From: Macrostomum hystrix
Taxonomy: Eukaryota > Animalia > Platyhelminthes
Direction: 5' to 3'
Assembly (NCBI GenBank): GCA_950097015.1
Contig: CATNEN010000024.1
Coordinates: 3,472,001 to 3,536,000 of the forward strand
DNA: 64,000 nucleotides
Program-made: the position numbers and the translations under genes
The notes under the pieces: generated by a model
Database searches by the model: none
Told to the model about the DNA's origin: nothing
Seen by the model: the letters and a program-made list of their open reading frames with translations, nothing else
Shown here: in pieces, positions 25,301 through 58,642 of the stretch
Numbering within the stretch: position 1 is the first letter of the stretch
How the letters are laid out: the number at the start of each line of letters is the position of its first letter

Positions 25301-28134
25301 TCATACATTCACCCAATTGATCATAAATTCACCCATTTGAGTCGACATTCACCCATTTGAGTCGGCATTCACCTATTTGAATGGGCATTCACCCATTTGA
25401 GTGGGCAAATGGAAAGGTTTAGCAAATTTTTCCCATCAGCAGCTTGTCTAATCTATGGGATTTACTCTGTGATGGGGTATACGCAGAGTCTGCTTTTATC
25501 CGCTGAGCTAATCCGTAACTCGCTGAAGTCGTTTGAATGGGGCCCAGCCCATGGGAAAGCCAGGAAATATGAACCGGACGGAGCCTCCAGCAAGGAGGAT
25601 GGATGCTTCCTTCTGCTGCTTCAAGAATTCCTTCAAGGCGGGCGACTCAGCTTACAAGAGAGAGAGAGAGTGAGTGAAGGGCGAGGCCAAGGCAAGAAGC
25701 TGGGACAGGTGAGGATAAATAGATCGCTATCCTTCCCTGCATGACTCGCAGCTGGCGATCCCCCCTACCCAACCAGGCCCAGGTGTAGGGAAAACGCTGG
25801 ATCTCGTAAAGAATAAGGAAATGGGAGAAATTCCCCATTGCACTATGCGGGTGTTGGGATAAGCGACAGGTGCTGCACATCTCCCAATCATTTTCTATCT
25901 CTCCCCTCATCTTCTTGTCGTCTTTCAGGTGAGCCAAGTGTCTTCGCTACTATCCCTTGAGGGGGAGGTAGCTCGGCGGATTAGGCGAAGATCACGCGGG
26001 AAGTGTTGGATTATCGATCCTTAATTCTCATCCATTCGATGCATACGAGATTAGCAATGACAGGGTCGGGACTTTAATCAAAGTGGATCTAGAAAGCACA
26101 GGGGACTAGATTACAGACAGGTGTTAATTAGAGACATCAAGGTTGAATCTTCAGGTCACCTCCGTGTACTGCACTGCTTGCCAACTCTCTAGTCTGCTTA
26201 TTTGGCTCAGATTATAAGTGCTCCAAGAGTTATTTCAGCTTTAATCTAGTCTCTCCAGTCTAGTCTGTCTCATCTAGTCTGTCTCATCTAGTCTGTCTCA
26301 TCTAGTCTGTCTCATCTAGTCTGTCTCATCTAGTCTGTCTCATCTAGTCTGTCTCATCTAGTCTGTCTCATCTAGTCTGTCTCATCTAGTCTGTCTCATC
26401 TAGTCTGTCTCATCTAGTCTGTCTCATCTAGTCTGTCTCATCTAGTCTGTCTCATCTAGTCTGTCTCATCTAGTCTGTCTCATCTAGTCTGTCTCATCTA
26501 GTCTGTCTCATCTAGTCTGTCTCATCTAGTCTGTCTCATCTAGTCTGTCTCATCTAGTCTGTCTCATCTAGTCTGTCTCATCTAGTCTGTCTCATCTAGT
26601 CTGTCTCATCTAGTCTGTCTCATCTAGTCTGTCTCATCTAGTCTGTCTCATCTAGTCTGTCTCATCTAGTCTGTCTCATCTAGTCTGTCTCATCTCTCCA
26701 GTGTCGGCTTCATCTCTCCAGTCTCGAGAGCCAATTCCAGCCTCTCCCATGGCCATCTTTAACTTTAGTTTCGCTCTAGTCGGCATTCGCGCAGTTGGTC
26801 TCAATTTCAGAATTCACGTATCTCCTGCCTTTTTTCCATGCTAATTCCCAATGGACCAGGACCCACCGATAAGCCGCCCAAAGCGCAGGGGGATAGTTTC
26901 ACTCATTGCAACTGTTTCGGGTTTGTTGAGGAAGTAGAGAAATTCATATTTTGTCCTGCAACTAGCAAACTTAAAGAGGTAGAATGTTCTAGTGTGTCAA
27001 GGCAGGCAGAAAACTAAAATAAACTCTAAAAGAAAATAGCGTGGCGCAAATTTTTTTGCCAAAAAAATTCTAGTCATTTTTTGTAGCAGCAAATCATTCG
27101 ACAATTGCAGCCTGTTCTTATACTTCTCTGCGCAGATGCTCTACGAGAATGGACTGGATTGAGTAAAACAGCGATGCTGAGATAGACAAGGTGAGATTGA
27201 GATGGTGAGATAGACAGGGTGAGATGGACAGGGTGAGATAGACAGGGTGAGATAGACAGGGTGAGATGGACAGGGTGAGATAGACAGAGTGAGATGGACA
27301 GGGTGAGATGGACAGGGTGAGATGGACAGAGTGAGATAGACAGGGTGCGATGGACAGGGTGAGATGGACAGGGTGAGATGGACAGGGTGAGATGGACAGG
27401 GTGAGATGGACAGAGTGAGATGGACAGGGTGAGATAGACAGGGTGAGATGGACAGGGTGAGATGGACAGAGTGAGATGGACAGGGTGAGATGGACAGGGT
27501 GAGATGGACAGGGTGAGATGGACAGGGTGAGATGGACAGGGTGAGATGGACAGGGTGAGATGGACAGGGTGAGATGGACAGGGTGAGATGGACAGGGTGA
27601 GATGGACAGGGTGAGATGGACAGGGTGAGATGGACAGGGTGAGATGGACAGGGTGAGATGGACAGGGTGAGATGGACAGGGTGAGATGGACAGGGTAAGA
27701 TGGACAGGGTGAGATGGACAGAGTGAGATGGACAGGGTGAGGAAACCGAGTTAGACACACAGTGTTAGACAGATGCAAAGTTTTTTATGCAAGCTCATGC
27801 AAAAACTTAACGATTGGCACTGTATGTGCTTTGTTTAAGATGCTTAGAATACCAAAAGAGTTATATAATTAAGAATTTATATCGTTTGAAAGTAAAACAA
27901 CTAAATTATTAAATAAGGAAAGGCGCAATTTTTATATTAAGAGTTAGAGTAAAATAGGAAAAAAGGAAAATGAGCAGCTTTTCGAATTTTCAGAAAAGAC
28001 AACAACAATCACTACTCACTTGGCGTTACCCAGTAAACTGCGAATGCAATTAGGCCCAGAATGGAGGCAATGACCACCAAGGCGATGACGATGCCCTTGA
28101 TGTTCTTCTGCGCCGGCGCGTTGCCAACGAGCTC
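4153..28134 (-). CDS. Dipeptidyl peptidase IV-family (S9B, DPP4/DPP6/DPP10-like) type II membrane protein, common coding region of 17 exons
   Basis: Exons joined by hand: 28134-28020, 20220-20113, 19338-19232, 19153-19085, 18863-18802, 18621-18525, 17987-17864, 17385-16991, 16092-15955, 15492-15338, 14535-14372, 13775-13559, 10943-10582, 6842-6781, 6711-6639, 6562-6489, 4323-4153. All introns GT-AG, phases match, total 2493 nt = 830 aa plus TGA. Motifs: TM segment, [53 protein letters not shown]. Exact orthology not resolvable without a tree. Confidence 0.95.
4400..6245. repeat. 26-bp minisatellite TTGTGACCAAGTGAAGGATCTGAGGG with 780-bp higher-order period
   Basis: Variant block ACCATGTGAAGGATGTGTAGATTGTTACC recurs at 4747 and 5527. 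Confidence 0.97.
6489..6562 (-). CDS. DPP4-family exon
   Basis: ttgcag|AT AAT GTG CAT: (D)[24 protein letters not shown]|gtgaga; phase 1 to 0. Confidence 0.93.
6639..6711 (-). CDS. DPP4-family exon (catalytic Asp)
   Basis: ctccag|[24 protein letters not shown]|gtaagc; phase 0 to 1. Confidence 0.93.
6781..6842 (-). CDS. DPP4-family exon
   Basis: ttgcag|(N)[20 protein letters not shown]|gtgact; phase 1 to 0. Confidence 0.92.
6851..7427 (-). mobile_element. tRNA-derived SINE, family 1, 5'-truncated, internally deleted, MITE-interrupted
   Basis: Reverse complement matches 2916-3170 in blocks (GTTCGATTCCACGGCGAGGCCACAT; CCTCCTCGCTGGCTGCGGGTCTAGTGT); (ATT/ACT) tail at 6852-6870. Confidence 0.75.
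7018..7337. mobile_element. Foldback MITE with 9-bp TSD (Mutator-like or Merlin-like) inserted in a SINE
   Basis: TSD AATTGCACG at 7009-7017 and 7338-7346; imperfect TIRs GGGG..TCACAA.CTCGAAATTTCACAAC; inner inverted pair ACTAAAATAGCAGCTACCTTCA and TGAAGGTAGCTGCTATTTTAGT. Confidence 0.8.
8180..10345. repeat. 20-bp minisatellite CACA(TT/CG)GTCACTCTCTAACA
   Basis: About 108 units; degenerate tail to about 10500. Confidence 0.97.
10582..10943 (-). CDS. DPP4-family exon (catalytic Ser, GWSYGG)
   Basis: ccgcag|(V)[17 protein letters not shown]...IDGRGT...FGWSYGGF...[12 protein letters not shown]|gtgagt; Ser codon TCG at 10693-10691. Confidence 0.96.
11110..13490. repeat. 39-bp minisatellite with related 24-bp units
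   Basis: GTTTGAAGAGGTCCAGTTGATACAGTTAAAGAGGACTGT; 24-mers at the start and near 11930-12120. Confidence 0.97.
13559..13775 (-). CDS. DPP4-family exon
   Basis: cggcag|(E)[18 protein letters not shown]...[21 protein letters not shown](V)|gttagt; phase 1 to 2. Confidence 0.9.
14071..14210. repeat. 25-bp minisatellite CCCTGCACTCTTCCGCCTTGGCACT
   Basis: About 5.5 units; shares CCCTGCACTCTTCCGC with 17460-17861. Confidence 0.9.
14372..14535 (-). CDS. DPP4-family exon (Cys-rich propeller segment)
   Basis: ccgcag|(R)[44 protein letters not shown]...SYE|gtaaat; phase 2 to 1. Confidence 0.92.
15147..15335. repeat. (TCAG)n microsatellite
   Basis: About 47 perfect units abutting the donor at 15336-15337. 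Confidence 0.97.
15338..15492 (-). CDS. DPP4-family exon
   Basis: tttcag|[35 protein letters not shown]...MHVH(R)|gtaact; phase 0 to 2. Confidence 0.9.
15955..16092 (-). CDS. DPP4-family exon
   Basis: ctctag|[46 protein letters not shown]|gtaagg; phase 0 to 0. Confidence 0.88.
16545..16890. repeat. Degenerate minisatellite of about 21 bp, TGACTCAGGGATTCCCCTT
   Basis: Repeated TGACTCAGGGATT cores. Confidence 0.85.
16991..17385 (-). CDS. DPP4-family exon
   Basis: gaacag|(E)[26 protein letters not shown]...IRYPKAG...WVNRNQD...PCKL|gtgaga; phase 1 to 0. Confidence 0.95.
17460..17861. repeat. 24-bp minisatellite CCCTACTCCCT(A/G)CACTCTTCCGCT
   Basis: Tandem units running up to the donor at 17862-17863. 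Confidence 0.93.
17864..17987 (-). CDS. DPP4-family exon
   Basis: ccgtag|[41 protein letters not shown]|gtagcg; phase 0 to 1. Confidence 0.94.
18088..18507. repeat. 18-bp G-rich minisatellite GGCGGAGGCAGAGGAG(T/A)G
   Basis: About 23 units. Confidence 0.96.
18525..18621 (-). CDS. DPP4-family exon
   Basis: tcgcag|(G)[32 protein letters not shown]|gtgagt; phase 2 to 0. Confidence 0.85.
18802..18863 (-). CDS. DPP4-family exon
   Basis: ttttag|[20 protein letters not shown]|gtgaga; phase 0 to 2; resembles the DPP4 WRHSYTASY segment. Confidence 0.9.
19085..19153 (-). CDS. DPP4-family exon
   Basis: ttccag|[23 protein letters not shown]|gttagc; phase 0 to 0. Confidence 0.83.
19232..19338 (-). CDS. 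DPP4-family exon
   Basis: ccgcag|(D)[35 protein letters not shown]|gtaatg; phase 1 to 0. Confidence 0.82.
19420..20030. repeat. Degenerate tandem repeat of about 110-130 bp
   Basis: Recurring CTACCCCAGCT(G/A/T)AAAACTTT, CCAACCACCTCACTCC and GTGAATGTTAATTCT blocks. Confidence 0.8.
20113..20220 (-). CDS. DPP4-family exon
   Basis: ttgcag|(R)[35 protein letters not shown]|gtaggg; phase 1 to 1. Confidence 0.82.
20669..21183. mobile_element. hAT (Charlie-like) MITE containing a 16-bp satellite
   Basis: TIRs CAGGGGTCGGCAAACT and AGTTTGCCTACCCCTG; flanks TACTAGAT and TACTAGTA (imperfect 8-bp TSD around CTAG); subterminal CGGCCCGC motifs. Confidence 0.8.
20755..21100. repeat. S16 satellite variant GTGTCTAATCTCTCCC inside the hAT MITE
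   Basis: Reverse complement of the unit at 1-1003. Confidence 0.93.
21229..21757. mobile_element. Possible MITE bounded by inverted repeats
   Basis: CCCCCTGACAATTTTTTTTGCTGCACCCGAA at the left and TTCGGGCGCTGCCAAAAAAATTGTCAGGGGG at the right; no clear TSD. Confidence 0.45.
21785..21905 (-). mobile_element. tRNA-like SINE head or tRNA pseudogene fragment
   Basis: Minus strand TAGCCCACTGGTTAAGG (A box) and GAGTTCGAATCTC (B box); I could not fold a full cloverleaf. Confidence 0.45.
22800..23330. repeat. Minisatellite of about 20 bp, ATTTGTCTGTTAGACAGGGC
   Basis: Tandem units with a GTCT-gtt-AGAC mini-hairpin. Confidence 0.92.
23785..25400. repeat. 20-bp minisatellite CATTCACCCATTTGA(GTCGG/TCATG/TCATA)
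   Basis: About 80 units; variant block repeated at 24201, 24421 and 24781. Confidence 0.97.
26270..26695. repeat. 14-bp minisatellite GTCTCATCTAGTCT
   Basis: About 30 essentially perfect units. Confidence 0.97.
27175..27740. repeat. 14-bp minisatellite GAGATGGACAGGGT
   Basis: About 40 units. Confidence 0.97.
28020..28134 (-). CDS. DPP4-family signal-anchor exon (first common exon)
   Basis: aaccag|[38 protein letters not shown]|gtgagt; 115 nt, phase 0 to 1; closely resembles the DPP6 [22 protein letters not shown] exon; no in-exon ATG. Confidence 0.93.
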
Positions 28135-28302
28135 CTGGTTGAAGGTTCGCAAATATCGAAATCATGTTTCTTCATATGAATCATATGATATGAAACTAAA
28201 TCACATGAAAACATTCATCAATATTAGAAAAAGAGTCGATTTAAACAAAAAAGTTTTTTTCTAACATGTAGAACTCTGGGTCACCTGCCAGATACGAAGG
28301 TA

Positions 28303-30065
28303 ATCTCTCCCGTGTCTCATCTCTCCCGTGTCTCATCCCTACCGCGTCTCATCTCTCCCGTGTCTCATCCCTCCCGTGTCTCATCTCTCCCGTGTCTCAT
28401 CTCTCCCGTGTCTCATCTCTCCCGTGTCTCATCTATCCTATGTCTCATCTCTCCCGTGTCTTATCTCTCCCGTGTCTCATCTATCCTATGTCTCATCTCT
28501 CCCGTGTCTCATCTCTCCCGTGTCTCATCACCCCCGTGTCTCATCACCCCCGTGTCTCATCTCTCCCGCGTCTCATCTCTCCCGTGTCTCATCTCTCCCG
28601 TGTCTCATCTCTCCCGTGTCTCATCTCTCCCGTGTCTCATCTCTCCCGTGTCTCATCTCTCCCGTGTCTCATCTCTCCCGTGTCTCATCTCTCCCGTGTC
28701 TCATCTATCCTATGTCTCATCTCTCCCGTGTCTTATCTCTCCCGTGTCTCATCTATCCTATGTCTCATCTCTCCCGTGTCTCATCTCTCCCGTGTCTCAT
28801 CACCCCCGTGTCTCATCACCCCCGTGTCTCATCTCTCCCGCGTCTCATCTCTCCCGTGTCTCATCTCTCCCGTGTCTCATCTCTCCCGTGTCTCATCTCT
28901 CCCGTGTCTCATCTCTCCCGTGTCTCATCTCTCCCGTGTCTCATCACCCCCGTGTCTCATCTCTCCCGCGTCTCATCTCTCCCGTGTCTCATCTCTCCCG
29001 TGTCTCATCTCTCCCGTGTCTCATCTCTCCCGTGTCTCATCTCTCCCGTGTCTCATCTATCCTATGTCTCATCTCTCCCGTGTCTCATCTCTCCCGTGTC
29101 TCATCTATCCTATGTCTCATCTCTCCTGTGTCTCATCACCCCCGTGTCTCATCTCTCCCGTGTCTCATCTCTCCCGTGTCTCATCTCTCCAATGTCTCAT
29201 CTCTCCCGTGTCTTATCTCTCCCGTGTCTCATCTATCCTATGTCTCATCTCTCCCGTGTCTCATCTCTCCCGTGTCTCATCACCCCCGTGTCTCATCACC
29301 CCCGTGTCTCATCTCTCCCGCGTCTCATCTCTCCCGTGTCTCATCTCTCCCGTGTCTCATCTCTCCCGTGTCTCATCTCTCCCGTGTCTCATCTCTCCCG
29401 TGTCTCATCTCTCCCGTGTCTCATCACCCCCGTGTCTCATCTCTCCCGCGTCTCATCTCTCCCGTGTCTCATCTCTCCCGTGTCTCATCTCTCCCGTGTC
29501 TCATCTCTCCCGTGTCTCATCTCTCCCGTGTCTCATCTATCCTATGTCTCATCTCTCCCGTGTCTCATCTCTCCCGTGTCTCATCTATCCTATGTCTCAT
29601 CTCTCCTGTGTCTCATCACCCCCGTGTCTCATCTCTCCCGTGTCTCATCTCTCCCGTGTCTCATCTCTCCAATGTCTCATCACTCCCGTGTCTCATCTCT
29701 CCCGTGTCTGATCTCTCTCGTGTCTCATCTCTCCTGTGTCTCATCTCTCCCTTGTCTGATCTCTCTCGTGTCTTATCTCTCCTGTGTCTCATCTCTCCCT
29801 TGTCTCATCTCTCCCGTGTCTCATCTCTCCCGTGTCTCATCTCTCCAGTGTCTCATCTCTCCCGTGTCTCATCTCTTCCGTGTCTCATCTCTCCTATCTC
29901 TCATCCCTCCCGCGCCTCATCTCTCCTGTGTCTCATCTCTCCCGTGTCTGATCTCTCTCGTGTCTCATCTCTCCTGTGTCTCATCTCTCCCTTGTCGTAT
30001 CTCTCCCCTGTCTCATCTCTCCCTAGTCGTATCTCTCCCTTGTCTTATATCAGCTGTGTCTCATC
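28303..30065. repeat. S16 satellite CCGTGTCTCATCTCTC with 480-bp higher-order block
   Basis: About 110 units; CTCTCCAATGTC variant near 29190 and 29670. Confidence 0.97.
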
Positions 30066-31008
30066 TAGATTAGACTAGATTAGATTAGACTAACTAGATA
30101 GCTGCTGGACGCTAAACTGCATCACAGTAGGCTTAAATAATAAAATGGTCTATAAGAATAATAAGGTAAATAAGGCACCAATTGGACGATCGATTGCTTC
30201 TGGCAGATGAGAGATAGAAATAAGTCGATTAATTTTCTTGGTTCTTCATCTCCAACAGGGGAATTCAGTCAGGCAATTCTCTGGTGAGCTTAACAGCTGG
30301 TAGCGAATCGACTGTCAGACCGGGCACCGGAGAGATCAAAGGCGCCGCCGCGCCGAAATCGGCTGGCAAGAAGCCGACGAAAGCACGTGAGCAAGCGAGC
30401 GAAAGGCCGGTTGTAAAATCAGCCAAAATTTATGGGATTGGTCTATTTTGTGGGCAAAGTCTTTGGGCAAGCGCTTGTTAATTGAATGGTTTGCCTACGG
30501 AAGCTTTGAAACTTTTTTGGTGATTGTTAATCCTTGGTTCTGGAACATTGTGCAGCTGTGTCTCGCGCTTAAAGGCTCTTAAGGTCCTGAGTTCGAAACT
30601 CGGGGAGTTATTTTCTAGAAAGAAAACTATCTTAAGAAAGAAATCCATTCAAAGAGAGAAAGCGATGTCCAGAAAAACAACAACAATTTTAAGATCGTAT
30701 TTTCTCCGCCAACTGTTCTAAGAAAGACGAATTCCAGGAAAGTAGATCATTCCAAGAAAGCTATTTATTTTAAAGTTTCATTCGAATACAACAAATTACT
30801 TAAAGGAAAAAATTAAAAGGAAGAAAATGCTCCATGATAGCAAGAAATATTGAAGACAGAAAGAGAATAATTCCAAAAAGGCAAATTGTTTCTAAAAGCT
30901 TTCTAAGAAAGAACCCGATTTAAAACCTCTAATTCCTCCAAAACAAAATTTGGAGGCACTCGCCAATCATCATGACACAAAGTATGCTAGTTAAAAATAA
31001 AAACTTAC

Positions 31009-31047
31009 TTCATTGAGTGGCACAGCCTGTTGCTTAGCAACCTCCAT
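31009..31047 (-). CDS. Candidate alternative N-terminal exon F
   Basis: gagcATGG context; MEVAKQQAVPLNE|gtaagt (consensus donor), phase 0; acceptor-like ctctctttgcttag 92 nt upstream with no intervening ATG. Confidence 0.62.
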
Positions 31048-31293
31048 GCTCCCAGTGGACTAAACTCAGTGATGTTGTTGACTAGACAACCAATCTGATC
31101 TCCTGATGTGTGTCCCTATCGATTGCTGTCTTTAGCTGTCTAAGCAAAGAGAGGCAAATCCTACTTGCCTCAGGTCCTTTTATCGTTTGCTAATCCAATA
31201 GTTGCTATGCGGCCAGGGAGAATTTTAGCCAATCGCGTTCGTCCTCTGACTAGCTAGCTCTGTCACACTCTCTTCTCTCTACTATCTTGGGTG

Positions 31294-31596
31294 TGTGATG
31301 TTATTCAATGGACTCTTGAATGTTATTCAATGCGTTCACTCTGCACCACTTTGTATTATGGCTTTGCTACCATTGATTGTTTATGTCTGTCGGTCCTTAG
31401 TGCAAGCTGAGTTGTTTACCAGTGTCACGCGTGGCTTGCGTGCTGGTTGAGGTGGCTGGCCCGCGGGGCCCAGCCGTGCCCTAAGCCCTAGGGTCAAATA
31501 GAACAGAGCGATAATATAAGGAGCCGCAACTCCCAACTGACTCGCTACGTTCTAGTGAATCAATTCTTGGCCAGCCTTCAGTCTTAAGTCATTACA
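31294..31596 (+). repeat. 5' LTR
   Basis: Direct repeat of 35288-35590; TG...CA ends. Confidence 0.97.
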
Positions 31597-31598
31597 AA

Positions 31599-31608
31599 TG
31601 GCGACGAG
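31599..31608 (+). promoter_or_regulatory. Primer binding site, probably tRNA-Ser(GCU)
   Basis: TGGCGACGAG 2 nt after the 5' LTR, complementary to a ...CUCGUCGCCA tRNA 3' end; overlaps the gag ATG at 31598. Confidence 0.7.
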
Positions 31609-31774
31609 TTCCGCGCTAGGTGGCATCCCCGTGCTCTCCGCTAACACAGATATCGATGTATATCTGGAGAGACTAGATCACTACTTCACATGCAAAGATG
31701 TGAAAGAGGAGGCGAAGGTGGTCACACTTGTCACGGCAATCGGCGCGGAGGCCTACACGGTGCTACGCAATCTG

Positions 31775-32246
31775 GGCAATATTACTACTTCCGTTCGTTA
31801 TATTATTTTTTCGTTTGAATTCGTGCCACACGTGCATTCTGAGTTTGAAAAGTTGTGCTGACGTGGCTTTGCCGTGACTTGACACTTGGATCTATGTCTA
31901 TGGCAAAATCTGGCAAATATGGGGGAACAGGAAGCTAAGGCACAGAAACTCTGCAGCTGAAGATTTTGCGAAGGCCAAGCTGCGTCAAATGCATGACACG
32001 AGTGCTGCTCTATTCGAAAGCCACCTCGAAGAATTCTTATGGCGCTGTCAATACCCCAAGAATAGCTTCGGTGCCCTCCTCTACTGGATTAGGCACTTAC
32101 CCGGTTTGAAAGAAGAAAGACTGACCAAGACTTTTCAGAACTGTCTGACCAAACTACGACTTTTTGTTACCGTTAAAAATGTTTTTGTCGTTATCTGTCG
32201 TTTGCAAACAAAAAAATAATATAACGAACGGAAGTAGAACATTGCC
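31775..32246 (+). mobile_element. Merlin/IS1595-like non-autonomous DNA transposon nested in gag
   Basis: About 37-bp TIRs GGCAAT(A/G)TT(A/-)CTACTTCCGTTCGTTATATTATTTTTT; 8-bp TSD GCAATCTG (31767-31774, 32247-32254; could also be read as 9 bp); internal remnant KLRQMHDTSAALFESHLEEFLWR resembles the C-terminus of ISXO2/Merlin transposases. Confidence 0.8.
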
Positions 32247-33309
32247 GCAATCTGTGCCAGCCTGACAAGGTAGCGGACAAGACGCTGGACCAGCTGTCTG
32301 AGATTCTGCGCGACCACTATGCACCGAAGCCTTCAGTGCTGGCAGCTCGATTTCGTTTCCAGCGGCGCGTGCAGCAACCCGGCGAGAGTTTCACAGACTT
32401 TGTCGCTGGCTTGAAGGCCTTGTCCGCTCATTGCGCCTTCCAGAACTCATTGGAGGAGCGGCTGCGCGACCAGCTTGTCTTCGGACTGTACAGCGACGCC
32501 TTCCGTGCGAAGCTCCTGGAGGAGGTGAATCCCACATTCAAATCGCTGCAGGAGAAAATGCTCCTCCTTGAGTCAACCGAGCGATCCTCGCAGGAGATGG
32601 CAAGTAAGCCGGCGGCGGCCGTGCCCAGTTGCGCACGCATGGAGGCAAGCGGAGCCAGCGCCGAGGTGCCACTCCAGCTGCACTCGGCGGCGACTCTCCA
32701 CATCAACGAAGCGTCAAGGGCGGAAATAGCGGCAACTTAGGCAAAGGCGGAGGAGACAACGGCCGAGATGGTGGAACCTGCGCAAGCTATGGTGGCGCCC
32801 ACAGCCGTCAACTCTGCAAGCTGCGAGACGCCAAATGCCATTCATGCGGCAAGACGGGCCACATCCGCAAGGTCTGCCGCTCGCCCAAGCTGCAGCTTCT
32901 GCAGGAAACCTCGCCTTCGTCACCGGATGCCTCGTCGCAGATGCCGATTTTCACCGTCCAGCTGCCCTGTGGCAGCTTAGGACCGACGGTGCAGCTACAA
33001 GTGAACGGGCGCCAGTGCCAGTTCATCATCGACACAGGCTCCGCTGTCACTCTGTTGCCGCAGAATTTGCAGCGGACTCGGAGGCTTCTGCCGCAGCTCC
33101 CACTGACGCCATCAACCGCCGTCCTGCGCACCTTCACCGACGAACGATTTCGCCCCATCGGCCAGGCGGTGGTCACCGTCAAGCACAATAGCCAGCATCT
33201 GCAGCTCCCGCTGCTTGTCGTCACGCAGGGCGAATCGGCGCTGCTCGGACGGGACTGGCTGGCTAAGCTGCGGCTGGACTGGTCGAGCATCATGGCGCAG
33301 GTCCTTGGC

Positions 33310-33900
33310 GCTCGTTTCTTGGAATGCTGGCGCAGTACGGCAAGTTCCTGCCGAATCTATCCACCGTGCTGGCGCCGCTGCATCAGCTCCTGGTCAAGAA
33401 CACGCGCTGGTCCTGGGAACGGCCGCAGCAGCAAGCGTTCGCCGAGGCAAAGCGGCTGCTGCTTCGGTCCCCGGTGCTCGTGCACTACAGCCCGGACCTG
33501 CCGCTGCGATTGGAGTGCGACGCCTCTCCCTACGCCTTGGCGTAGTGCTGACGCACCGCATCGGCGACAAGGACTGCGCGGTCGCCTTCGCTAGCCGGAG
33601 CCTGAACACGGCACAGCGCGGCTACTCGCAACTGGACAAGGAGGCGCTGGCCATCATGTTCGGCCTGGACCGCTTCCACCAGTTCCTCTACGGCCACCGC
33701 TTCACCATCGTCACTGACCATCTGCCGCTGCTGGGGCTGCTAGGCGAGCGCAAGGGCATCCCGGCGCATGCGGCCGCCCGCATGCAGCGCTGGGCCTCCG
33801 CCTGGCGAGCTACGACTATGCGCTCGAGTTCCTGCCGACGGAGAAGCACGCTAACTGCGACTCGCTCTCGCGACTGCCGCTGCCGCAGCTGTTCGAGGAG
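33310..33900 (+). pseudogene. Gypsy RT connection and RNase H, frameshifted
   Basis: RSFLGMLAQYGKFLPNLSTVLAPLHQLL...LECDASPYAL, then VAFASRSLNTAQRGYSQLDKEALAIMFGLDRFHQFLYGHRFTIVTDH in another frame. Confidence 0.9.
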
Positions 33901-34129
33901 GAGGCGGCTGTCAACTCGCTGCTACTCGACGAGGGGGCCGGATCGGCCGTCACGGCGCAGACGGTGGAGCGACACACGCGGACAGACGCATCGCTGGGCC
34001 GCGTGCTACGCTGCCTGCAGACTGGGGCGCCCATCGGCGCCGAGCTGAGCGACTGCGCCCGGCGGCAGACGGAGCTGTCGGTTGACCAAGGCTGCGTGTT
34101 GTGGGGCGCCAGAGTCGTAGTACCAGCGG

Positions 34130-35260
34130 CGCTGCGCGATCACGTCATCCAAGAGCTCCACCAGGCGCATCCAGGCACCAGCAGAATGCGCGCCCTAGCT
34201 CGCAGCTACGTCTGGTGGCGATTTGGAGGCTGCAACTAAGACCTGCAGGACCTGTCAGCTCAACCAGCCCGACCCGCCAAAGGCGCCCGTGCAGCCGTGG
34301 CCGTTCCCGTCGGAGCCGTGGGAGCGCCTGCATGTCGACTTCGCCGGGCCTGTCGACGGTCATGTGTACCTGGTGGTGGTGGACGCCCACAGCAAGTGGC
34401 CGGAGGTCGTGCGGATGCGCTGCACCACAGCGGCAGCCACAATCGCGAGTCTGCGGGAGATCTTCGCCCGCCAAGGCATCCTGCGCACGCTGGTGTCCGA
34501 CAACGGGCCGCAGTTCGCCTCCGCCGAGTTCGCCGAATTCACCCGAGCCAATGGCATTCGTCATGTGTTCTCGGCACCTTTCCATCCTGCCACGAATGGC
34601 CAAGCCGAGCGCTTCGTCCAAGTTCTAAAGCGGCATCTGCTCAAGAGTGGTCTTTCTGATGTCGATCTCCAGCGACTACTGCTCGGCTACCGCAACACGC
34701 CACTCAGCGTCAGCGGCGTCGCTCCCAGCCAACTACTTGTCGGCCGGCGGCTCCGATGCCGCCTGAATCTACTGGTACCATCACTGGCCGACGACGTGCG
34801 ACAGCGACAGGAGCAGCTGCTACCGAGCAGGAAGGCGGCGCGTGAGTTCCAAACCGGTGATCGTGTGCTCTTCCGCTACTTCAGCGCCGGTGCGAGAGCC
34901 GGCGACACGCCGCGCTGGGCGGAGGGCGTCATCAAGAGCGCTGGCAGCCGCAACTGCATCGTCGACTCGCAGCGCGGTCAGCACATGCGGCATGCGGATC
35001 AGCTGGTTGCGGCCCGCGCTGACGGCTTCGACCTCGACATCGCTGATGTCGGCCAGCCGCTGACTGATGGCGGCGGTGACGCGACCCTGGGAACTGGCGG
35101 TGCGCGCGCCACTCCTGATACTGTCGCCAGCGGCGCCACCATCGGCGAGGCGGCACCTGAACCCGCCGACGGACCGGAGAGCAACGCGCGTCGGGATGCC
35201 ACGAATCCCCGGCGGTACCCTCTGAGAGCTCGTGGCCCACCTGAGAGACTGCAGCTGTGA
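34130..35260 (+). pseudogene. Gypsy integrase (HHCC plus DDE), frameshift near 34220
   Basis: ELHQAHPG...CRTCQ; LHVDFAGP, VSDNGPQF, NGQAERFVQ; C-terminal RRYPLRARGPPERL. Confidence 0.92.
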
Positions 35261-35287
35261 TGGGAGAAAACTGACTCAGAGGGGAGA

Positions 35288-35590
35288 TGTGATGTTATTC
35301 AATGGACTCTTGAATGTTATTCAATGCGTTCACTCTGCACCACTTTGTATTATGGCTTTGCTACCATTGATTGTTTATGTCTGTCGGTCCTTAGTGCAAG
35401 CTGAGTTGTTTACCAGTGTCACGCGTGGCTTGCGTGCTGGTTGAGGTGGCTGGCCCGCGGGGCCCAGCCGTGCCCTAAGCCCTAGGGTCAAATAGAACAG
35501 AGCGATAATATAAGGAGCCGCAACTCCCAACTGACTCGCTACGTTCTAGTGAATCAATTCTTGGCCAGCCTTCAGTCTTAAGTCATTACA
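35288..35590 (+). repeat. 3' LTR
   Basis: Direct repeat of 31294-31596; preceded by purine tract AGAGGGGAGA (35278-35287). Confidence 0.97.
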
Positions 35591-35774: not shown

Positions 35775-36310
35775 AAAGACGAGACTGGGGAGAGATAAGA
35801 CAGGGGAGATAAGACGGGAGAGATGAGACACGAGAGAGATAAGACAGGGGTGAGATAAGACGGGGGAGAGATAAGACGGGAGATAAGACAGGGGAGAGAA
35901 AAGACGGGAGATAAGACGGGGGAGAGATAAGACAGGGGAAAGATGAGACACTGGAGAGATGAGACGCGGGAGGGACGAGAAATAGAAGAGATGAGACACG
36001 GGAGAGATGAGACGCGGGAGAGATGAGACACGTGAGAGATAAGATACTGGAGAGATAAGACACTGGAGAGATGAGACACGGGAGAGATGAGACGCGGGAG
36101 GGATGAGAAATAGAAGAGATGAGACACGGGAGAGATGAGACACTGGAGAGATGAGACATGGGAGAGATGAGACACGTGAGAGATGAGACACGGGAGAGAT
36201 AAGACACGGGAGAGATGAGACACGTGAGAGATGAGACACGGGAGAGATAAGACACGGGAGAGATGAGACACGGGAGAGATGAGACACTGGAGAGATGAGA
36301 CACTGAGACA
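35775..36310. repeat. S16 satellite (GAGAGATGAGACACGG orientation), degenerate
   Basis: Same unit as 1-1003. Confidence 0.93.
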
Positions 36311-36979: not shown

Positions 36980-37210
36980 AGTGCATCGAGCTCCCGACTT
37001 GAAGGTCGGGGGTTCGATTCTTGACTCCACTGAAACAATTTGTATAATTTAGCATGCCACTTGACTCTGCATTGCTTTAGTTCACCCAGCTGTTAAATGG
37101 GTACCAGAATTAGCTGGTGGTTGGTGTGGCGTCTGCCCAGTCCATGGACTGAACAGCCGCATGCAGCCTTCAGATGTGCCTTAGCTGCGGCTGGCTGTCG
37201 GCTGCACCAG
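36980..37210 (+). mobile_element. tRNA-derived SINE, family 2, with CORE-like central segment
   Basis: B-box GGTTCGATTC, then TTCACCCAGCTGTTAAATGGGTACC and CCAGTCCATGGACTGAACAGCC shared with 1594-1775 and 41420-41530. Confidence 0.65.
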
Positions 37211-40277: not shown

Positions 40278-40319
40278 CTCGTCAGCGTCTAGATCGTCAT
40301 TGTACTCCGACTCGCTCAT
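40278..40319 (-). CDS. Candidate alternative N-terminal exon E
   Basis: MSESEYNDDLDADE|gtaaat, phase 0; ctgac...tccag directly upstream; acidic end joining ELVG. Confidence 0.6.
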
Positions 40320-41419
40320 TCTGGATCAGACAGTCAGGTTTGGGGTGGGTTGTCAAGCTAAGATGAGGAGCACACTGCACCCGTCAGTGCCAGACTGTTG
40401 CTACCGCCGTGTTTGGTCTTGGCATATGGACGACTTTGTCAACAGAAAGAAATTGTGTTTTCTTTACAAATAGACAAAATTATAATGGGATTTTAGCTTC
40501 GGTTTGGCAAAAATATCAGACTCTCCTATAGGTGCCTGTTGCTGGGATATTGACCAGCGGCGGTGGCCGCTGCTCCTCTTATCCCCGCCGCTTCGCTCTG
40601 CCGAAAGCCGTCCCTCCCCTGCCGCTCTCCCTCCGTCTCTCTCTCTCTCTCTATTCTGGTTGGACGCAGCGAGTATTCTGCATGCTTTTAGAAGAAGCAA
40701 GAAGCTGTCTCTCGGCTGATCCGGCAGTATCTGGGAGGCTGCGGCAACAGCTCCAGAGCCGTCGTTTCGGTTGACTCTGGCAGCTGGTTTGTGTTGCAGT
40801 TTCTGGGGTCTATGGCCACTACTAGCCCTGCTCCTCCTTAGGCAGCTATTCTCTTCCCCTTTTAACTTCCCCTAGTTGCTGGGAGAAAGAGGCAGATGGA
40901 GGGGAGGGGAGAATTGAAGCCGGAGGGAAAACTAAAGGATTTTTTCATGGGGCAAACTGAGGGATAAGAATAGGCGCGGTAGGGAGGCGGGCGGCAACAA
41001 GGCGGAAGAAGGCAGGGCTGAGGGATCAAGTTGAGCTGATGGAAAGGATGGAGGCTGAGATGGGGATTATTTGACAGAGGGGAGAGCGCCAGAGAGGCAG
41101 CAGGGAGTGGTCGGTTGGTTGGAGGTCTCCCGGCGTGTGGAAGTTGGAGCTCAAACTGTGCTCAAATCGTGGCCAAAGAGAGTCTGGGCGACGGAGGCGG
41201 GCAGAGACAAGGAGCAGTTTCAGCAGTTTTGAGCACACTGGGAAAGCCCAACCAGGGCCAACGGAGTCATGAGTTTATTTTTCTTCTTTTGTTAAGAATA
41301 TAATATTAAGAGAGTAAAGCATTGTGACGAGACTTCGTCAGTTTAACTTTAATTTTCATATTTTTCACTCGACTCTGAAGTATAAGTCAGAATCGAAAAA
41401 AATAATAATCAAATGTGCC

Positions 41420-42301: not shown

Positions 42302-42445
42302 CTCTAGTCGTTCAAAGGTTTGATCAACTGTTTCAGTCCGCAGCAGCTGCTGATGCGTGCTCCGCCCGGCGCCGCCGCCGCCGCCGCCAACGCCACCGCC
42401 GCCACCGCCACCCGTATGCATGGCACCTGATCTACTGGCTAACAT
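42302..42445 (-). CDS. Candidate alternative N-terminal exon D
   Basis: MLASRSGAMHTGGGGGGGVGGGGGGAGRSTHQQLLRTETVDQTFERLE|gtaaaa, phase 0; paralogous to exon C. Confidence 0.72.
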
Positions 42446-46332: not shown

Positions 46333-46375
46333 TGCTATTATTTTCCTAACTCTGTAACCGGCCCAGCTACCTCAC

Positions 46376-46522
46376 CTCCATATTCTCGAACACGGTGTCC
46401 ACATTCTCCGTGCGCCGATTAAAACGGCCCTTCAGCAGGGCGCCACCGGGCCCCGCGCTTCCGTCATCGTCGCCGCCGCCGCCGCCACTCCCGCCGCTGA
46501 CTGTGACACGTGCGGCGAACAT
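46376..46522 (-). CDS. Candidate alternative N-terminal exon C
   Basis: MFAARVTVSGGSGGGGGDDDGSAGPGGALLKGRFNRRTENVDTVFENME|gtgagg, phase 0; acceptor ttttcttttctcaaag 71 nt upstream. Confidence 0.75.
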
Positions 46523-51595: not shown

Positions 51596-51884
51596 CCGAT
51601 GTTTTATTTTTTGTGTTATGTTCTCCTACTTTTATGTCTTCACGCAAGGGGGAACTGCTTGCACTCCTATCAATTTTTTGTCAAAAGTTTCTTTTCATTT
51701 CATAAAATCAAGAAAGACAGAAAAAACCTCTGAGAGACAAAGCTAGAGAATGGCGCCCATGAATTGCTGAATCTTCTTTTAATGTTTTTTAAAGCGGCGA
51801 CTTGAGCAATGAAACTAGCTGTTAGAGAAGGGTTCTCCACATGCGACTGGCCAACTCTTCCCTACCCACTTTATGCCTTCACCC

Positions 51885-53040: not shown

Positions 53041-53379
53041 TAGCTTTTGTCTCAAATGTTTACCACATTCAATTCAGGTTTCAACATTTCATTTCAGGTG
53101 CATCACTCTACTGTTAGTAGAAATGTCAGTGGCTGTGTCGATTAAAAACAGATAGAGTATGAATATTTTAGTGTAATAATTTAATTTAATTTGGGAAAAA
53201 TGCTTCGCAGTTTGAATGCTGGCTCGTAGGATTTTGAATTAGCTAGTCTGAGAGATTTTGCAAATATTTCTAGCATGATCTACGAGTAAATAATTATTTA
53301 CTGCTCTCTCTAAATTCCTACTCTCTTGAAGCAGATTTAGACTGTTAGAAGCAATGCGAGGCTCAATTAACTGCCTCAC

Positions 53380-53670
53380 CGCTGGTCCCTCCGCCACCCT
53401 AATAACACCAGCAGCTCGGCGGTTGAACTCGCCGGTGCTTCGATGGCTCGCTTCGACGGCTGTTGCGAAGCTGGCATCCGCGGTCGTGACTTCGGTTGCC
53501 TCAAAGCCGGACGTCTCGTCTTGGCCGTCGCCGGCGCTATTTTTGTTTCCATGACAACGAACGTTAAGTAAGACACTGACGCGCGTTCGGCCTCGCCATT
53601 TGCCACCGTCGTCGTCGCCGAGGTAGTCGTTGGCGTAGTCTTCAAATAGCGGGTCCGGGGCTGCAGACAT
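53380..53670 (-). CDS. Candidate alternative N-terminal exon B (long, 97 aa)
   Basis: MSAAPDPLFEDYANDYLGDDDGG...GEFNRRAAGVIRVAEGPA|gtgagg, phase 0; acceptor gctttttcttag 29 nt upstream; GC-rich open frame. Confidence 0.62.
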
Positions 53671-54264
53671 GTCTCTCGGTTCGAGGTTCGAATTTTTTTC
53701 TAAGAAAAAGCAGCAAGACTCGAGCCTTGGGTGCTCAGATGGGACGCCAGCCGTTGAATTCTTCTTCTCAAAACGGAGCAGCTGTGCTCAGTGTTTTTCA
53801 TATCCTCGCGTCTCAGGCCAAGGGCTTCTCAGGGGATTGGCGGGCCGTGAATCCTCCTTTTCCCTTTCTTTTCCTGGTCAAGTCTCTCTTTTAGTCGAGA
53901 AAAAAATATATAGTCCTCTGTCTTGCCGCCGCCTGTGCTTCCGGTTATTTCTGCTTTTCGCTAGCAAATTTTCCATCGGACGGTCCGTTGGAACTCAAAT
54001 CCCTTCCTTAGTCCCATGTAAGCCCAACTTCACCTGACCTACATTGGGATTTGATGATAAGGATTTGCGAAGCGAGCAACTTTTTGTCTGCAAGCTGACT
54101 CCTTCAAAAACAACTGCCGAAATTTGATGTTGCTTTTTAATAGCGGGCAAACGCAATGGAAAGGCTTCCTTTCTTCAAAGCAGAAGGGAAGCCACCTTAA
54201 TTAAACCTTACTACAGGTAGTGCTTCGGTTTCGTATGCGTGGCACAAGCACTACACCGCTTTGC

Positions 54265-57200: not shown

Positions 57201-58210
57201 CAATCCGATCCCTTATATGACTCAAAATTCATTTGTCAATCCGATCCCTTATATGACTCAAAAGTCATTTGTCAATCCGATCCCTTATATGACTCAAAAT
57301 TCATTTGTCAATCCGATCCCTTATATGACTCAAAATTCATTTGTTAATCCGATCCCTTATATGACTCAAAAGTCATTTGTCAATCCGATCCCTTATATGA
57401 CTCAAAAGTCATTTGTTAATCCGATCCCTTATTTGACTCAAAAGTCATTTGTTAATCCGATCCCTTATATGACTCAAAAGTCATTTGTCAATCCGATCCC
57501 TTATATGACTCAAAAGTCATTTGTTAATCCGATCCCTTATTTGACTCAAAAGTCGTTTGTTAATCCGATCCCTTATATGACTCAAAAGTCATTTGTTAAT
57601 CCGATCCCTTATATGACTCAAAAGTCATTTGTTAATCCGAGCCCTTATTTGACTCAAAAGTCATTTGTTAATCCGATCCCTTATTTGACTCAAAAGTCAT
57701 TTGTTAATCAGATCCCTTATATGACTCAAAAGTCATTTGTTAATCCGATCCCTTATATGACTCAAAAGTCATTTGTTAATCCGATCCCTTATATGACTCA
57801 CAAGTCATTTGTTAATCCGATCCCTTATATGACTCAAAAGTCATTTGTCAATCCGATCCCTTATTTGACTCACAAGTCATTTGTTAATCCGATCCCTTAT
57901 ATGACTCACAAGTCATTTGTTAATCCGATCCCTTATATGACTCAAAAGTCATTTGTCAATCCGATCCCTTATTTGACTCAAAAGTCATTTGTTAATCCGA
58001 TCCCTTATATGACTTACAAATCATTTGTTAATCCGATCCCTTACATGACTCAAAAGTCATTTGTTAATCCGAGCCCTTATTTGACTCAAAAGTCATTTGT
58101 TAATCCGATCCCTTATATGACTCAAAAGTCATTTGTTAATCCGATCCCTTATATGACTCAAAAGTCATTTGTTAATCCGATCCCTTATATGACTCACAAG
58201 TCATTTGTTG
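54265..58210. repeat. 36-bp satellite ATGACTCAAAAGTCATTTGTTAATCCGATCCCTTAT
   Basis: About 110 units, nearly all with TGACTCA. Confidence 0.98.
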
Positions 58211-58392
58211 CGAGTCAAATAGCGATGCTAGAGTCTTTCTACAACAAGCAATGTCACCGTCTTTTTTATCAACAATTTTGTTCACAAAAATCGTATATTA
58301 GCAAACAAACTACTAACTAGTAGGGTGTTTGATACACTGTGCAAAAAACGAATCAGTCAAAAAATCATCAATTTGAAATAGATTTCACTCAC

Positions 58393-58503
58393 TGCCAAGA
58401 CCTCCGGAGGTATTTGATCGAATGCTGCATTTTTTCCTTGCTTTTTCTTAAAGTTTTCTCGGCCACCGCGCCGGTCGCCACCCGCTCCGGATGAGGCGTA
58501 CAT
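58393..58503 (-). CDS. Candidate alternative N-terminal exon A
   Basis: MYASSGAGGDRRGGRENFKKKQGKNAAFDQIPPEVLA|gtgagt, phase 0; acceptor ttttacttatttttatctag at 58643-58644, then (CCAG)n up to the ATG. Confidence 0.6.
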
Positions 58504-58504
58504 C

Positions 58505-58642
<138 letters not shown>

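What the first reader, a model, noticed from the sequence alone, without database searches (positions are those of the whole stretch)
28020..58642. Cassette of at least six alternative N-terminal coding exons feeding one DPP4/DPP6-like transmembrane exon
Seen: the first common exon (ELVGNAP...TM, 28134-28020) has a phase-0 acceptor and no ATG. Six short minus-strand ORFs lie upstream in the unique islands between satellites, each running ATG to a phase-0 GT donor: 58503-58393 (MYASSGAGG...PEVLA|gtgagt), 53670-53380 (97 aa, ...EGPA|gtgagg), 46522-46376 (...FENME|gtgagg), 42445-42302 (...FERLE|gtaaaa), 40319-40278 (MSESEYNDDLDADE|gtaaat) and 31047-31009 (MEVAKQQAVPLNE|gtaagt). Four end in E, giving E-ELVG junctions. 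Known: vertebrate DPP6 and DPP10 use alternative first exons joined to the homologous ELVG/ELG exon, and some of those cytoplasmic N-termini change Kv4 channel inactivation. Inference: this invertebrate gene keeps or independently rebuilt a variable cytoplasmic-tail array of 13-97 aa on a constant ectoenzyme. None of these exons shows as such in the ORF track. Caveat: short ATG-to-GT matches also occur by chance, so the two shortest are the least secure.
Basis: partly seen in the sequence, partly recalled or inferred. Interest (0 to 1): 0.85.

Follow-up and report, generated by a model that had tools for sequence, protein, structure and literature searches.

The report
Six alternative first exons, flatworm DPP6/10-like gene
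A flatworm membrane peptidase gene related to the human potassium-channel partners DPP6 and DPP10 has six alternative first coding exons; two are shown in RNA to splice to one shared membrane-anchor exon, and all six are conserved in a related species, so this human-type gene layout is old rather than a vertebrate invention.

Summary

**What is there**
- The pattern alone is not significant. Unique sequence holds 19 such ORFs on the minus strand and 12 on the plus strand.

**RNA evidence**
- Contigs from four samples of one study cover exactly the common exon.
- They continue upstream into E6 (31047-31009) in two runs and into E5 (40319-40278) in the other two, at the predicted donors.

**Conservation**
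- In three Macrostomum lignano orthologous loci, similarity across 36 kb is confined to E2-E6. In blastn it starts at the ATG for four of these five exons and stops just past the donor.
- Substitutions are mostly synonymous: E3 10 synonymous to 0 nonsynonymous, E5 6:0, E4 15:3.
- E1 has a collinear homologue in the M. lignano paralogue locus.

**Caveats and novelty**
- Splicing of E1-E4 to 28134 is inferred, not seen.
- The gene keeps GWSYGG, so it resembles fly DPP10 (active peptidase), not the inactive vertebrate DPP6.
- RefSeq isoforms of a tick and a nemertean already show variable N-termini joined to the same ELV exon. This is a new member of a known kind.
- The scan noted a similar array elsewhere in this genome (s1-322000, unchecked).

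The parts
58393..58503 (-). E1: alternative first coding exon, 37 aa (MYASSGAGG...IPPEVLA), donor GTGAGT in phase 0. A (GCCA)n microsatellite lies immediately 5' of it.
   Evidence: Sequence. A collinear homologue lies in the M. lignano paralogue locus, L004 2897-2998 (MYTSSGAGGGRPIGSKRKGQRELSISELPPEILA|GTGAGAA). Global score is 77 against shuffles of -15 +/- 9, 0 of 2000 reaching it. It has no RNA evidence, and the orthologous loci could not be tested because their flank ended.
53380..53670 (-). E2: alternative first coding exon, 97 aa. The N-terminal motif MSAAPDPLFEDYAND is conserved, the middle has diverged, and the donor is GTGAGGC in phase 0.
   Evidence: The blastn match to M. lignano starts at the ATG. 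The ORF is kept open at 94/95 codons in M. lignano and ends at the identical GTGAGGC donor. The paralogue locus L004 3607-3840 has the same motif and donor. It has no RNA evidence.
46376..46522 (-). E3: alternative first coding exon, 49 aa (MFAARVTV-Gly-rich-ALLKGRFNRRTENVDTVFENME), donor GTGAGG in phase 0.
   Evidence: In 30 alignable codons against M. lignano there are 10 synonymous and 0 nonsynonymous nucleotide differences. The ATG and donor are conserved. Flanks are 25-30% identical. It has no RNA evidence.
42302..42445 (-). E4: alternative first coding exon, 48 aa (MLASRSGAM-Gly-rich-HQQLLRTETVDQTFERLE), donor GTAAAA in phase 0. It is a tandem paralogue of E3.
   Evidence: The ratio is 15 synonymous to 3 nonsynonymous differences in 30 codons. 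The blastn match runs 42445-42300, from the ATG to just past the donor. In-frame stops lie upstream of the ATG. It has no RNA evidence.
40278..40319 (-). E5: alternative first coding exon, 14 aa (MSESEYNDDLDADE), donor GTAAAT in phase 0.
   Evidence: RNA contigs of runs X2 and X4 join its last 32 nt to 28134. It is 100% identical in protein to M. lignano, with 6 synonymous differences. It is the annotated N-terminus of M. lignano PAA76838.1, PAA89369.1 and PAA74979.1.
31009..31047 (-). E6: alternative first coding exon, 13 aa (MEVAKQQAVPLNE), donor GTAAGT in phase 0.
   Evidence: RNA contigs of runs X1 and X3 join its last 30 nt to 28134. The M. lignano homologue MDAAKQQAVPLNE|GTGAGT is collinear, lying between E5 and the TM exon. 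The paralogue gene models start MDTRKHTQLPD|ELVG.
28020..28134 (-). Common exon 2: phase-0 acceptor, no ATG. It encodes [11 protein letters not shown] plus the transmembrane helix and ends in phase 1.
   Evidence: In one search, contigs of all four runs cover exactly this exon and are spliced on both sides. In one search it aligns end to end with human DPP6 residues 18-55 ([38 protein letters not shown]).
4156..20215 (-). Remaining common exons of the ectodomain: the DPPIV_N beta-propeller and the Peptidase_S9 domain. They carry WVYE|EE, GWSYGG, GTGD|DNVH and YPDEDH. The stop codon follows ...NQC at about 4156.
   Evidence: tblastn of the M. lignano orthologue P0001 against the window; Pfam scan exon by exon; ORF list.
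40925..41018 (-). Conserved non-coding pyrimidine-rich block about 600-700 nt upstream of the E5 ATG. It may be the E5 promoter or a leader element.
   Evidence: Collinear blastn match to M. lignano L002 9172-9273, 70% identity over 108 nt; the block is also present in L001. Its function is not tested.

Best explanation
The window carries a complete gene of at least 54 kb on the minus strand. It encodes a type II membrane, DPP4-family (S9B) peptidase of the DPP6/DPP10 lineage in a Macrostomum-type flatworm.

Six short 5' exons lie in unique islands between intronic satellites, spread over 30 kb. Each carries its own start codon and 13-97 codons of cytoplasmic tail, and each ends at a phase-0 GT donor. 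None has a conserved acceptor, so each can only be a first exon. Whichever one is transcribed splices past the others to the single phase-0 acceptor at 28135|28134 of the ATG-less ELVG/transmembrane exon.

The result would be up to six proteins with an identical membrane anchor and an identical, apparently active ectoenzyme, but different cytoplasmic N-termini. Separate promoters are the most likely source of the alternatives.

Shown here:
- the exons, their frames and their donors;
- E5 to exon 2 and E6 to exon 2 junctions in RNA;
- purifying selection on the peptides of E2-E6, and homology of E1.

Inferred:
- E1-E4 also splice directly to exon 2;
- each exon has its own promoter;
- the tails tune partner binding, trafficking or Kv4/Shal-type channel gating, as in vertebrate DPP6/DPP10.
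For: **RNA**
- One contig per run (X1-X4) covers exactly 28019/20-28134.
- The 30 loose letters upstream are the reverse complement of the end of E6 in X1 and X3, and of the end of E5 in X2 and X4.
- 120-252 nt of transcript lie upstream of the junction.

**Orthologue comparison with three M. lignano loci**
- Nucleotide similarity across 36 kb is restricted to E2-E6 and exon 2.
- blastn matches begin at the ATG of E2, E4, E5 and E6 (53670/1, 42445, 40319, 31047). For E3-E6 they end 2-7 nt past the donor. The masked tblastx search agrees.
- The ATG and the phase-0 GT are conserved in every copy.
- Synonymous to nonsynonymous differences are E3 10:0, E4 15:3, E5 6:0, E6 4:3 and the E2 N-terminus 4:3, against 9:15 in exon 2. 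The 40-nt flanks are 22-35% identical.

**Paralogue locus L004 (protein 54% identical)**
- It has E1-like, E2-like, E5-like and E6-like exons in the same order, each with a phase-0 GT donor.

**Annotated proteins**
- M. lignano PAA76838.1 starts MSESEYNDDLDADE|ELVG.
- Paralogue models start either MSETAECQNDVGDLDAEE|ELVG or MDTRKHTQLPD|ELVG.

**Family placement**
- Pfam finds DPPIV_N and Peptidase_S9.
- The best solved relative is DPP6, at 5e-104.
- Exon 2 aligns end to end with the DPP6 ELVG exon.
- DPP6 and DPP10 use alternative first exons on a common core of 25 exons (PMC3973911).
Against: - No RNA evidence was obtained for E1-E4. Only one read-laying run was available, the runs are assembled contigs that keep one path per branch, and all four come from one study.
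- E1 has a homologue only in the paralogue locus. The orthologous M. lignano flank ended about 970 nt upstream of E2, so E1 was untestable there.
- A UniProt model of M. lignano (A0A1I8I163, P0002) chains E3, E4 and E5 in series rather than as alternatives.
- The middle of E2 is poorly conserved.
- No transcription start, promoter or spliced-leader data were obtained.
- Any channel-related function is analogy only.
Confidence: 0.85

Rival explanations
1. Only E5 and E6 are true alternative first exons. E1-E4 are conserved for another reason: exons of a different transcript, small independent ORFs, or relics. They do not feed the transmembrane exon.
For: Only E5 and E6 junctions were seen in RNA contigs. 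NCBI's M. lignano annotation lists only the E5 form for all three copies. The E4-like block in the paralogue locus has lost its ATG, so such exons can decay.
Against: E2-E4 each show a conserved ATG at the point where the conserved peptide begins (for E2 and E4 the blastn match itself starts there), a conserved phase-0 GT donor, and synonymous-dominated change. This is the signature of a translated first exon that must splice onward. The only conserved phase-0 acceptor downstream is exon 2. Logan contigs drop minor branches, so absence from them is uninformative.
Confidence: 0.1
2. The upstream exons are used in series in one long 5'-extended transcript (E3 then E4 then E5 then exon 2), as in the M. 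lignano model A0A1I8I163, rather than as mutually exclusive first exons.
For: P0002 reads ...FENME-VRIVSE-MLASRSG...FDRLE-IPTVAATPAATGE-MSESEYNDDLDADE-ELVG. In M. lignano the short stretches upstream of the E4 and E5 ATGs are open in frame.
Against: In the window, in-frame stops lie 3 codons upstream of the E5 ATG and about 13 codons upstream of the E4 ATG. The AGs in between put a phase-0 donor out of frame. The 40 nt upstream of each ATG are 22-35% identical between species, which is random. P0002 also contains non-homologous read-through segments, typical of ab initio models. The transcript-based NCBI models start at E5.
Confidence: 0.04
3. The six ORFs are chance ATG-to-GT matches in intronic or intergenic DNA.
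For: Such ORFs are frequent here: 19 on the minus strand and 12 on the plus strand in 18.2 kb of unique sequence.
Against: Exactly the six named ORFs, and none of the other 25, are conserved in M. lignano loci. Two of them are joined to exon 2 in RNA.
Confidence: 0.01

Closest known systems
Vertebrate DPP6 and DPP10 (dipeptidyl-peptidase-like proteins, Kv4 auxiliary subunits)
   Same: Both are type II membrane S9B proteins. Several alternative first exons encode variable cytoplasmic N-termini: five DPP6 and four DPP10 variants, on a common core of exons (PMC3973911). The first common exon begins ELVG and encodes the membrane helix. The window's exon aligns residue for residue with human DPP6 18-55. 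DPP6 is the best solved-structure match of the orthologue.
   Different: The flatworm protein keeps the catalytic triad (GWSYGG, D, H) and the Glu-Glu motif, whereas DPP6 and DPP10 have lost the serine. No similarity was seen between the flatworm N-terminal peptides and the vertebrate ones. Kv4 binding and gating effects are untested. The introns here are filled with satellites.
Drosophila DPP10 orthologue (PMC4873792)
   Same: It is an invertebrate DPP6/10-lineage protein that retains the catalytic serine. Its cytoplasmic and transmembrane part resembles DPP6/DPP10 rather than DPP4. It has been shown to be both an active peptidase and a Kv4 ancillary subunit. This is the best functional analogue.
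   Different: The paper does not mention isoforms or splice variants. The flatworm gene has six first exons. Neither enzyme activity nor channel binding was tested here.
RefSeq isoform sets of 'inactive dipeptidyl peptidase 10(-like)' in Ixodes scapularis (X1-X7) and Tubulanus polymorphus (X1-X4)
   Same: Each gene has four different N-termini of 1-59 aa joined to the same ELVS/ELVG...RNWRG exon, and each keeps GWSYGG. An acidic ...YDDE|ELV N-terminus in the tick, with similar ones in a mosquito and a wasp, resembles the flatworm E5 (...DLDADE|ELVG).
   Different: These are pipeline annotations in other phyla, and no paper describing them was found here. Their exon order and exon-level orthology to E1-E6 were not examined.
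Macrostomum lignano BOX15_Mlig002127g4/g2 and Mlig008602g1 (PAA76838.1, PAA89369.1, PAA74979.1)
   Same: These are the orthologue, about 78% identical in protein over clean exons. The E2-E6 array is collinear, and the E5 N-terminus is annotated.
   Different: Only the E5 form is annotated there. The window comes from a different species, or at least from a sequence absent from the protein database.

Membership tests
S9B dipeptidyl peptidase family (DPP4/FAP/DPP6/DPP10) | DPPIV_N beta-propeller followed by a Peptidase_S9 alpha/beta-hydrolase domain | tested here: met
   Window exons 16991-17353(-) match PF00930 at 7e-24 and 10580-10960(-) match PF00326 at 6e-18. The orthologue P0001 has both domains.
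S9B dipeptidyl peptidase family (DPP4/FAP/DPP6/DPP10) | Type II topology: a short cytoplasmic N-terminus, then a single membrane helix | tested here: met
   Exon 2 encodes ...[24 protein letters not shown], and it aligns with the DPP6 membrane helix seen in Kv4 complex structures.
Active DPP4-type peptidase | Catalytic Ser in GWSYGG, plus Asp and His, and the Glu-Glu substrate-anchoring motif | tested here: met
   GWSYGG lies in the exon at 10574-10921. GTGD|DNVH, YPDEDH and NWVYE|EE are also present. Enzyme activity itself was not tested.
DPP6/DPP10-type gene architecture | First common exon begins ELVG..P.Q[KR]N.[KR]G and encodes the membrane helix | tested here: met
   End-to-end alignment with human DPP6 18-55, E = 0.002 for a 38-aa query. 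The same motif is found in 22 relatives.
DPP6/DPP10-type gene architecture | Two or more alternative first exons, each with its own ATG, spliced to that common exon | tested here: met
   E5|exon 2 and E6|exon 2 junctions are seen in RNA contigs. E1-E4 are supported by conservation only.
Vertebrate 'inactive' DPP6/DPP10 proper | Loss of the catalytic serine (Asp in DPP6, Gly in DPP10; PMC4873792) | tested here: not met
   The serine is retained in GWSYGG. The gene is not a member of the inactive vertebrate subgroup and is closer in kind to fly DPP10.
Kv4 channel auxiliary subunit | Binds Kv4/Shal and changes gating, with N-terminal variants giving different inactivation | not testable with these tools
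   This rests only on analogy with DPP6/DPP10 (PMC3973911) and fly DPP10 (PMC4873792).

The most novel reading that the evidence does not exclude
The variable-first-exon cassette on the ELVG exon is ancestral to bilaterians and existed while the protein was still an active peptidase. At least one exon type, the acidic ...DD[DE]|ELV N-terminus (flatworm E5, and similar ones in a tick, a mosquito and a wasp), would be orthologous across phyla. In flatworms the six tails would give cell-type-specific control of Kv4/Shal channels or of trafficking of the enzyme.

A further untested possibility is a seventh form. The Macrostomum spliced leader ends in ATG, and trans-spliced onto the exon 2 acceptor it would read M-ELVG in frame. 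This parallels the tick RefSeq isoforms that begin M|ELVS.
Probability: 0.3. Interest if true: 0.6.

Novelty: new member of a known kind. Interest (0 to 1): 0.45.

Why it matters
In vertebrates, the alternative N-termini of DPP6 and DPP10 are a main source of diversity in neuronal A-type potassium currents. Together with loss of enzyme activity, they have been treated as a feature of the vertebrate genes.

Here the same gene layout, with the same exon 2 boundary, sits on an apparently active peptidase in a flatworm. It has six conserved tails, some of which predate a gene duplication within Macrostomum. With the tick and nemertean isoform sets, this points to an old bilaterian design in which enzyme and variable cytoplasmic tail coexisted.

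The practical gain is better annotation. Only the E5 form is annotated in M. lignano, and five more first exons are predicted for it. It also offers a small, experimentally tractable animal in which the role of each tail could be tested.

Tried and rejected
1. **Chance.** I counted all ATG..GTRA phase-0 ORFs. The pattern alone is not significant, so the case rests on conservation and RNA.

2. **Finding the window's own protein or isoforms in the protein databases.** None was found. The best hits are M. lignano proteins at about 70-85% identity. The full spliced protein of the window was never assembled or searched. Exons were searched one by one by reference, and the M. lignano orthologue P0001 served as proxy.

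3. **Serial-exon model (P0002).** Rejected because of in-frame stops and unconserved sequence upstream of the E4 and E5 ATGs.

4. **Spliced-leader trans-splicing at the AG that lies 0-2 nt before five of the six ATGs.**
   - The AG is not conserved in position in M. lignano except at E5.
   - The E5 and E6 contigs carry 132-212 and 81-142 nt upstream of the ATG, more than the 35-nt leader.
   - It is therefore not supported for these two exons and untested for the rest.

5. **E1 in the orthologous M. lignano loci.** The 10-kb flank ended about 970 nt upstream of E2, and no hit was found. A homologue was found only in the paralogue locus.

6. **LTR origin of E6.** E6 lies about 250 nt outside the LTR of the intronic retroelement, so it is not LTR-derived.

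7. **The non-collinear 44-nt match 59354-59397 to L001 16617-16660.** This is a dispersed repeat with three copies in the window, not a regulatory element.

8. **Read laying on other islands.** Read laying could be used only once.

Full report
**1. Observation**

The common exon reads as described. On the minus strand...aaccAG|GAGCTCGTT opens a phase-0 exon without an ATG. It translates to [38 protein letters not shown]. It ends CCAA|GTGAGT, at 28020, in phase 1.

The six upstream ORFs are at the stated coordinates with the stated peptides and donors.

The window is about half tandem satellite. The six exons sit in the unique islands between arrays.

The bare pattern is not unusual. In the 18.2 kb of unique sequence upstream of the common exon I counted 19 phase-0 ATG..GTRA ORFs of at least 13 codons on the minus strand and 12 on the plus strand.

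**2. The gene**

Downstream exons on the minus strand, about 20215 to 4156, encode a DPPIV_N propeller and a Peptidase_S9 domain. The following motifs are intact:
- GWSYGG
- GTGD|DNVH
- YPDEDH
- NWVYE|EE

A profile-free search with one propeller exon found Macrostomum lignano proteins as the closest relatives. PAA76838.1 (P0001, 850 aa) is about 78% identical over clean exons. No identical or near-identical protein exists in the database.

Exons were searched singly by reference, and P0001 served as proxy for the whole protein.

**3. Annotated relatives**

- P0001 and two further M. lignano copies begin MSESEYNDDLDADE|[11 protein letters not shown]. This is E5 joined to the common exon.
- A paralogous M. 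lignano family (54% identity) is annotated with two different N-termini on its ELVG exon. One is MSETAECQNDVGDLDAEE (E5-like) and the other is MDTRKHTQLPD (E6-like).
- A UniProt model (P0002) instead chains E3, E4 and E5 in series.

**4. Comparative test**

I fetched the three orthologous M. lignano loci (L001-L003) and one paralogous locus (L004), each with 10 kb of upstream flank.

*Where similarity lies.* blastn of window 27000-64000 against the orthologous loci found collinear similarity only at E2, E3, E4, E5, E6 and exon 2.
- The matches begin at the ATGs of E2, E4, E5 and E6: 53670/1, 42445, 40319 and 31047.
- The E3 nucleotide match begins 25 nt inside the exon, and tblastn carries it back to the ATG.
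- The E3-E6 matches end 2-7 nt beyond the donors.
- After masking tandem repeats, tblastx found the same five exons and nothing else of note.

*Start and donor.* Every copy keeps the ATG and a phase-0 GT at the homologous place. E2 keeps the identical donor heptamer GTGAGGC, with an ORF of 97 codons in the window against 94/95 in M. lignano, although its middle has diverged.

*Codon-level differences.*

| Region | Codons compared | Synonymous | Nonsynonymous |
|---|---|---|---|
| E3 | 30 | 10 | 0 |
| E4 | 30 | 15 | 3 |
| E5 | 14 | 6 | 0 |
| E6 | 13 | 4 | 3 |
| E2 N-terminus | 14 | 4 | 3 |
| Exon 2 | 38 | 9 | 15 |

The 40 nt on either side of each first exon are 22-35% identical, which is random. 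This is the signature of translated first exons under purifying selection.

*E1.* It could not be tested in the orthologous loci because the flank ends about 970 nt before E2. The paralogous locus carries MYTSSGAGGGRPIGSKRKGQRELSISELPPEILA|GTGAGAA about 620 nt upstream of its E2-like exon. Its alignment score to E1 is 77, against -15 +/- 9 for shuffles, with 0 of 2000 reaching it.

*Age of the array.* The paralogous locus also has, in the same order, an E2-like exon (MSTLSAPDPLFKDYAND...|GTGAGGC), an E5-like exon, an E6-like exon, and an ATG-less relic of E4. The array therefore predates the duplication of the two Macrostomum genes.

*Controls.* None of the other 13 minus-strand or 12 plus-strand chance ORFs is conserved.

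**5. RNA**

One run search returned four runs of one 2020 study (X1-X4). Each holds about 25% of the words of a 9.9-kb coding stretch, which equals its exon content.

- In each run, one contig of 1.3-3.0 kb covers exactly 28019/20-28134 and is spliced on both sides. The runs therefore contain spliced RNA.
- In X1 and X3 the 30 letters beyond 28134 are the reverse complement of GCTAAGCAACAGGCTGTGCCACTCAATGAA, the end of E6.
- In X2 and X4 they are the reverse complement of CGGAGTACAATGACGATCTAGACGCTGACG, followed by the shared AG. This is the end of E5.
- Both junctions use exactly the predicted donors and the acceptor at 28134.
- The contigs continue 120-252 nt upstream. This is 81-212 nt beyond the ATGs and longer than the 35-nt Macrostomum spliced leader (PMC8629364).

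Assembled contigs keep one path per branch. The absence of E1-E4 from them therefore says nothing.

**6. Rivals**

- *Serial model (P0002).* It is not conserved. In the window an in-frame stop lies three codons before the E5 ATG, and stops lie about 13 codons before the E4 ATG. The intervening AGs would put a phase-0 donor out of frame. P0002 also contains read-through segments typical of ab initio models.
- *E1-E4 conserved but not feeding exon 2.* This cannot be excluded without reads. However, each has a conserved start and a conserved phase-0 donor, and exon 2 is the only conserved phase-0 acceptor downstream.
- *Chance.* Excluded.

**7. Comparison with what is known**

- Exon 2 aligns end to end with human DPP6 residues 18-55, [38 protein letters not shown].
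- DPP6 is the best solved-structure match of the orthologue, at 5e-104, against 1e-88 for DPP4.
- DPP6 and DPP10 are known to use alternative first exons for variable cytoplasmic N-termini on a common core of 25 exons. Five and four variants are known, and some change Kv4 gating (PMC3973911).
- The flatworm gene differs in keeping the catalytic serine. In this it resembles fly DPP10, which is both an active peptidase and a Kv4 subunit (PMC4873792).
- The layout is already visible in public annotation of other invertebrates. Ixodes scapularis 'inactive DPP10' isoforms X1-X7 carry four N-termini, including MTDPYPIYDDE| and a bare M|, on one ELVS exon. Tubulanus polymorphus X1-X4 carry four on one ELVG exon. 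All keep GWSYGG.
- An acidic ...DD[DE]|ELV tail recurs in a tick, a mosquito, a wasp and flatworm E5.

**8. Verdict**

The finding is real. It is best described as a conserved array of six alternative first coding exons on a DPP6/DPP10-lineage, catalytically intact peptidase gene.
- Two exons are proven by RNA.
- Three more are strongly supported by selection signatures.
- One is supported by paralogue homology.

It is a new member of a known kind, not a new mechanism. 'Kept' is favoured over 'independently rebuilt'. The functional reading, tails tuning channel gating or trafficking, is analogy only.

The scan's note s1-322000 reports a similar four-exon array on another piece of this genome. 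I did not check it, but the M. lignano paralogue locus shows such an array.

Noticed in passing
window 31294-35587 (+ strand): An LTR retrotransposon lies inside the intron between E5 and E6, antisense to the gene. Its two 300-nt LTRs (31294-31593 and 35288-35587) are 100% identical, which suggests a recent insertion. Gag/zinc-knuckle, protease, RT/RNase H and integrase-like ORFs are split over several frames. I only observed it and reconstructed nothing.
   Followed up: partly
window 5-1004, 20766-21094, 28303-30066, 35777-36303: The same 16-nt satellite family (ATCTCTCCCGTGTCTC and its complement) recurs in four arrays, in both orientations, within the introns of one gene. About half of the 36 kb upstream region is tandem repeat.
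   Followed up: no
window 40925-41018 (-); L001 ~9183; L002 9172-9273: A pyrimidine-rich non-coding block about 600-700 nt upstream of the E5 ATG is conserved and collinear between the window and M. lignano, at 70% identity over 108 nt. It is the only conserved non-coding element found, and it may be the E5 promoter or a leader.
   Followed up: partly
window 1593-1620 (+), 37083-37110 (+), 59360-59387 (-); L001 16627-16654: A dispersed repeat core, CACCCWGCTGTAAAATRGGTRCCAGCAT, is present three times in the window and once upstream of exon 2 in each M. lignano orthologous locus. It is probably part of a small mobile element.
   Followed up: partly
L001 7192-7690; L002 and L003 downstream of E4: In M. 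lignano the intron just after the E4 donor begins with a very long in-frame (AGC/GTA)n run, read as poly-Ser or poly-Val. It keeps the ORF open for 200-600 codons and would mislead ab initio gene finders.
   Followed up: no
proteins P0083, P0166, P0168, P0169 (Ixodes scapularis) and P0047, P0179-P0181 (Tubulanus polymorphus): RefSeq names these 'inactive dipeptidyl peptidase 10', yet they carry GWSYGG. The name seems to be transferred from vertebrates and is probably wrong about activity.
   Followed up: partly
L004 7831-8499: The E4-like block of the M. lignano paralogue (LRTADLDSTFNRFE|GT) has no ATG and is preceded in frame by a (DRQT)n microsatellite. It may be a decayed first exon.
   Followed up: no
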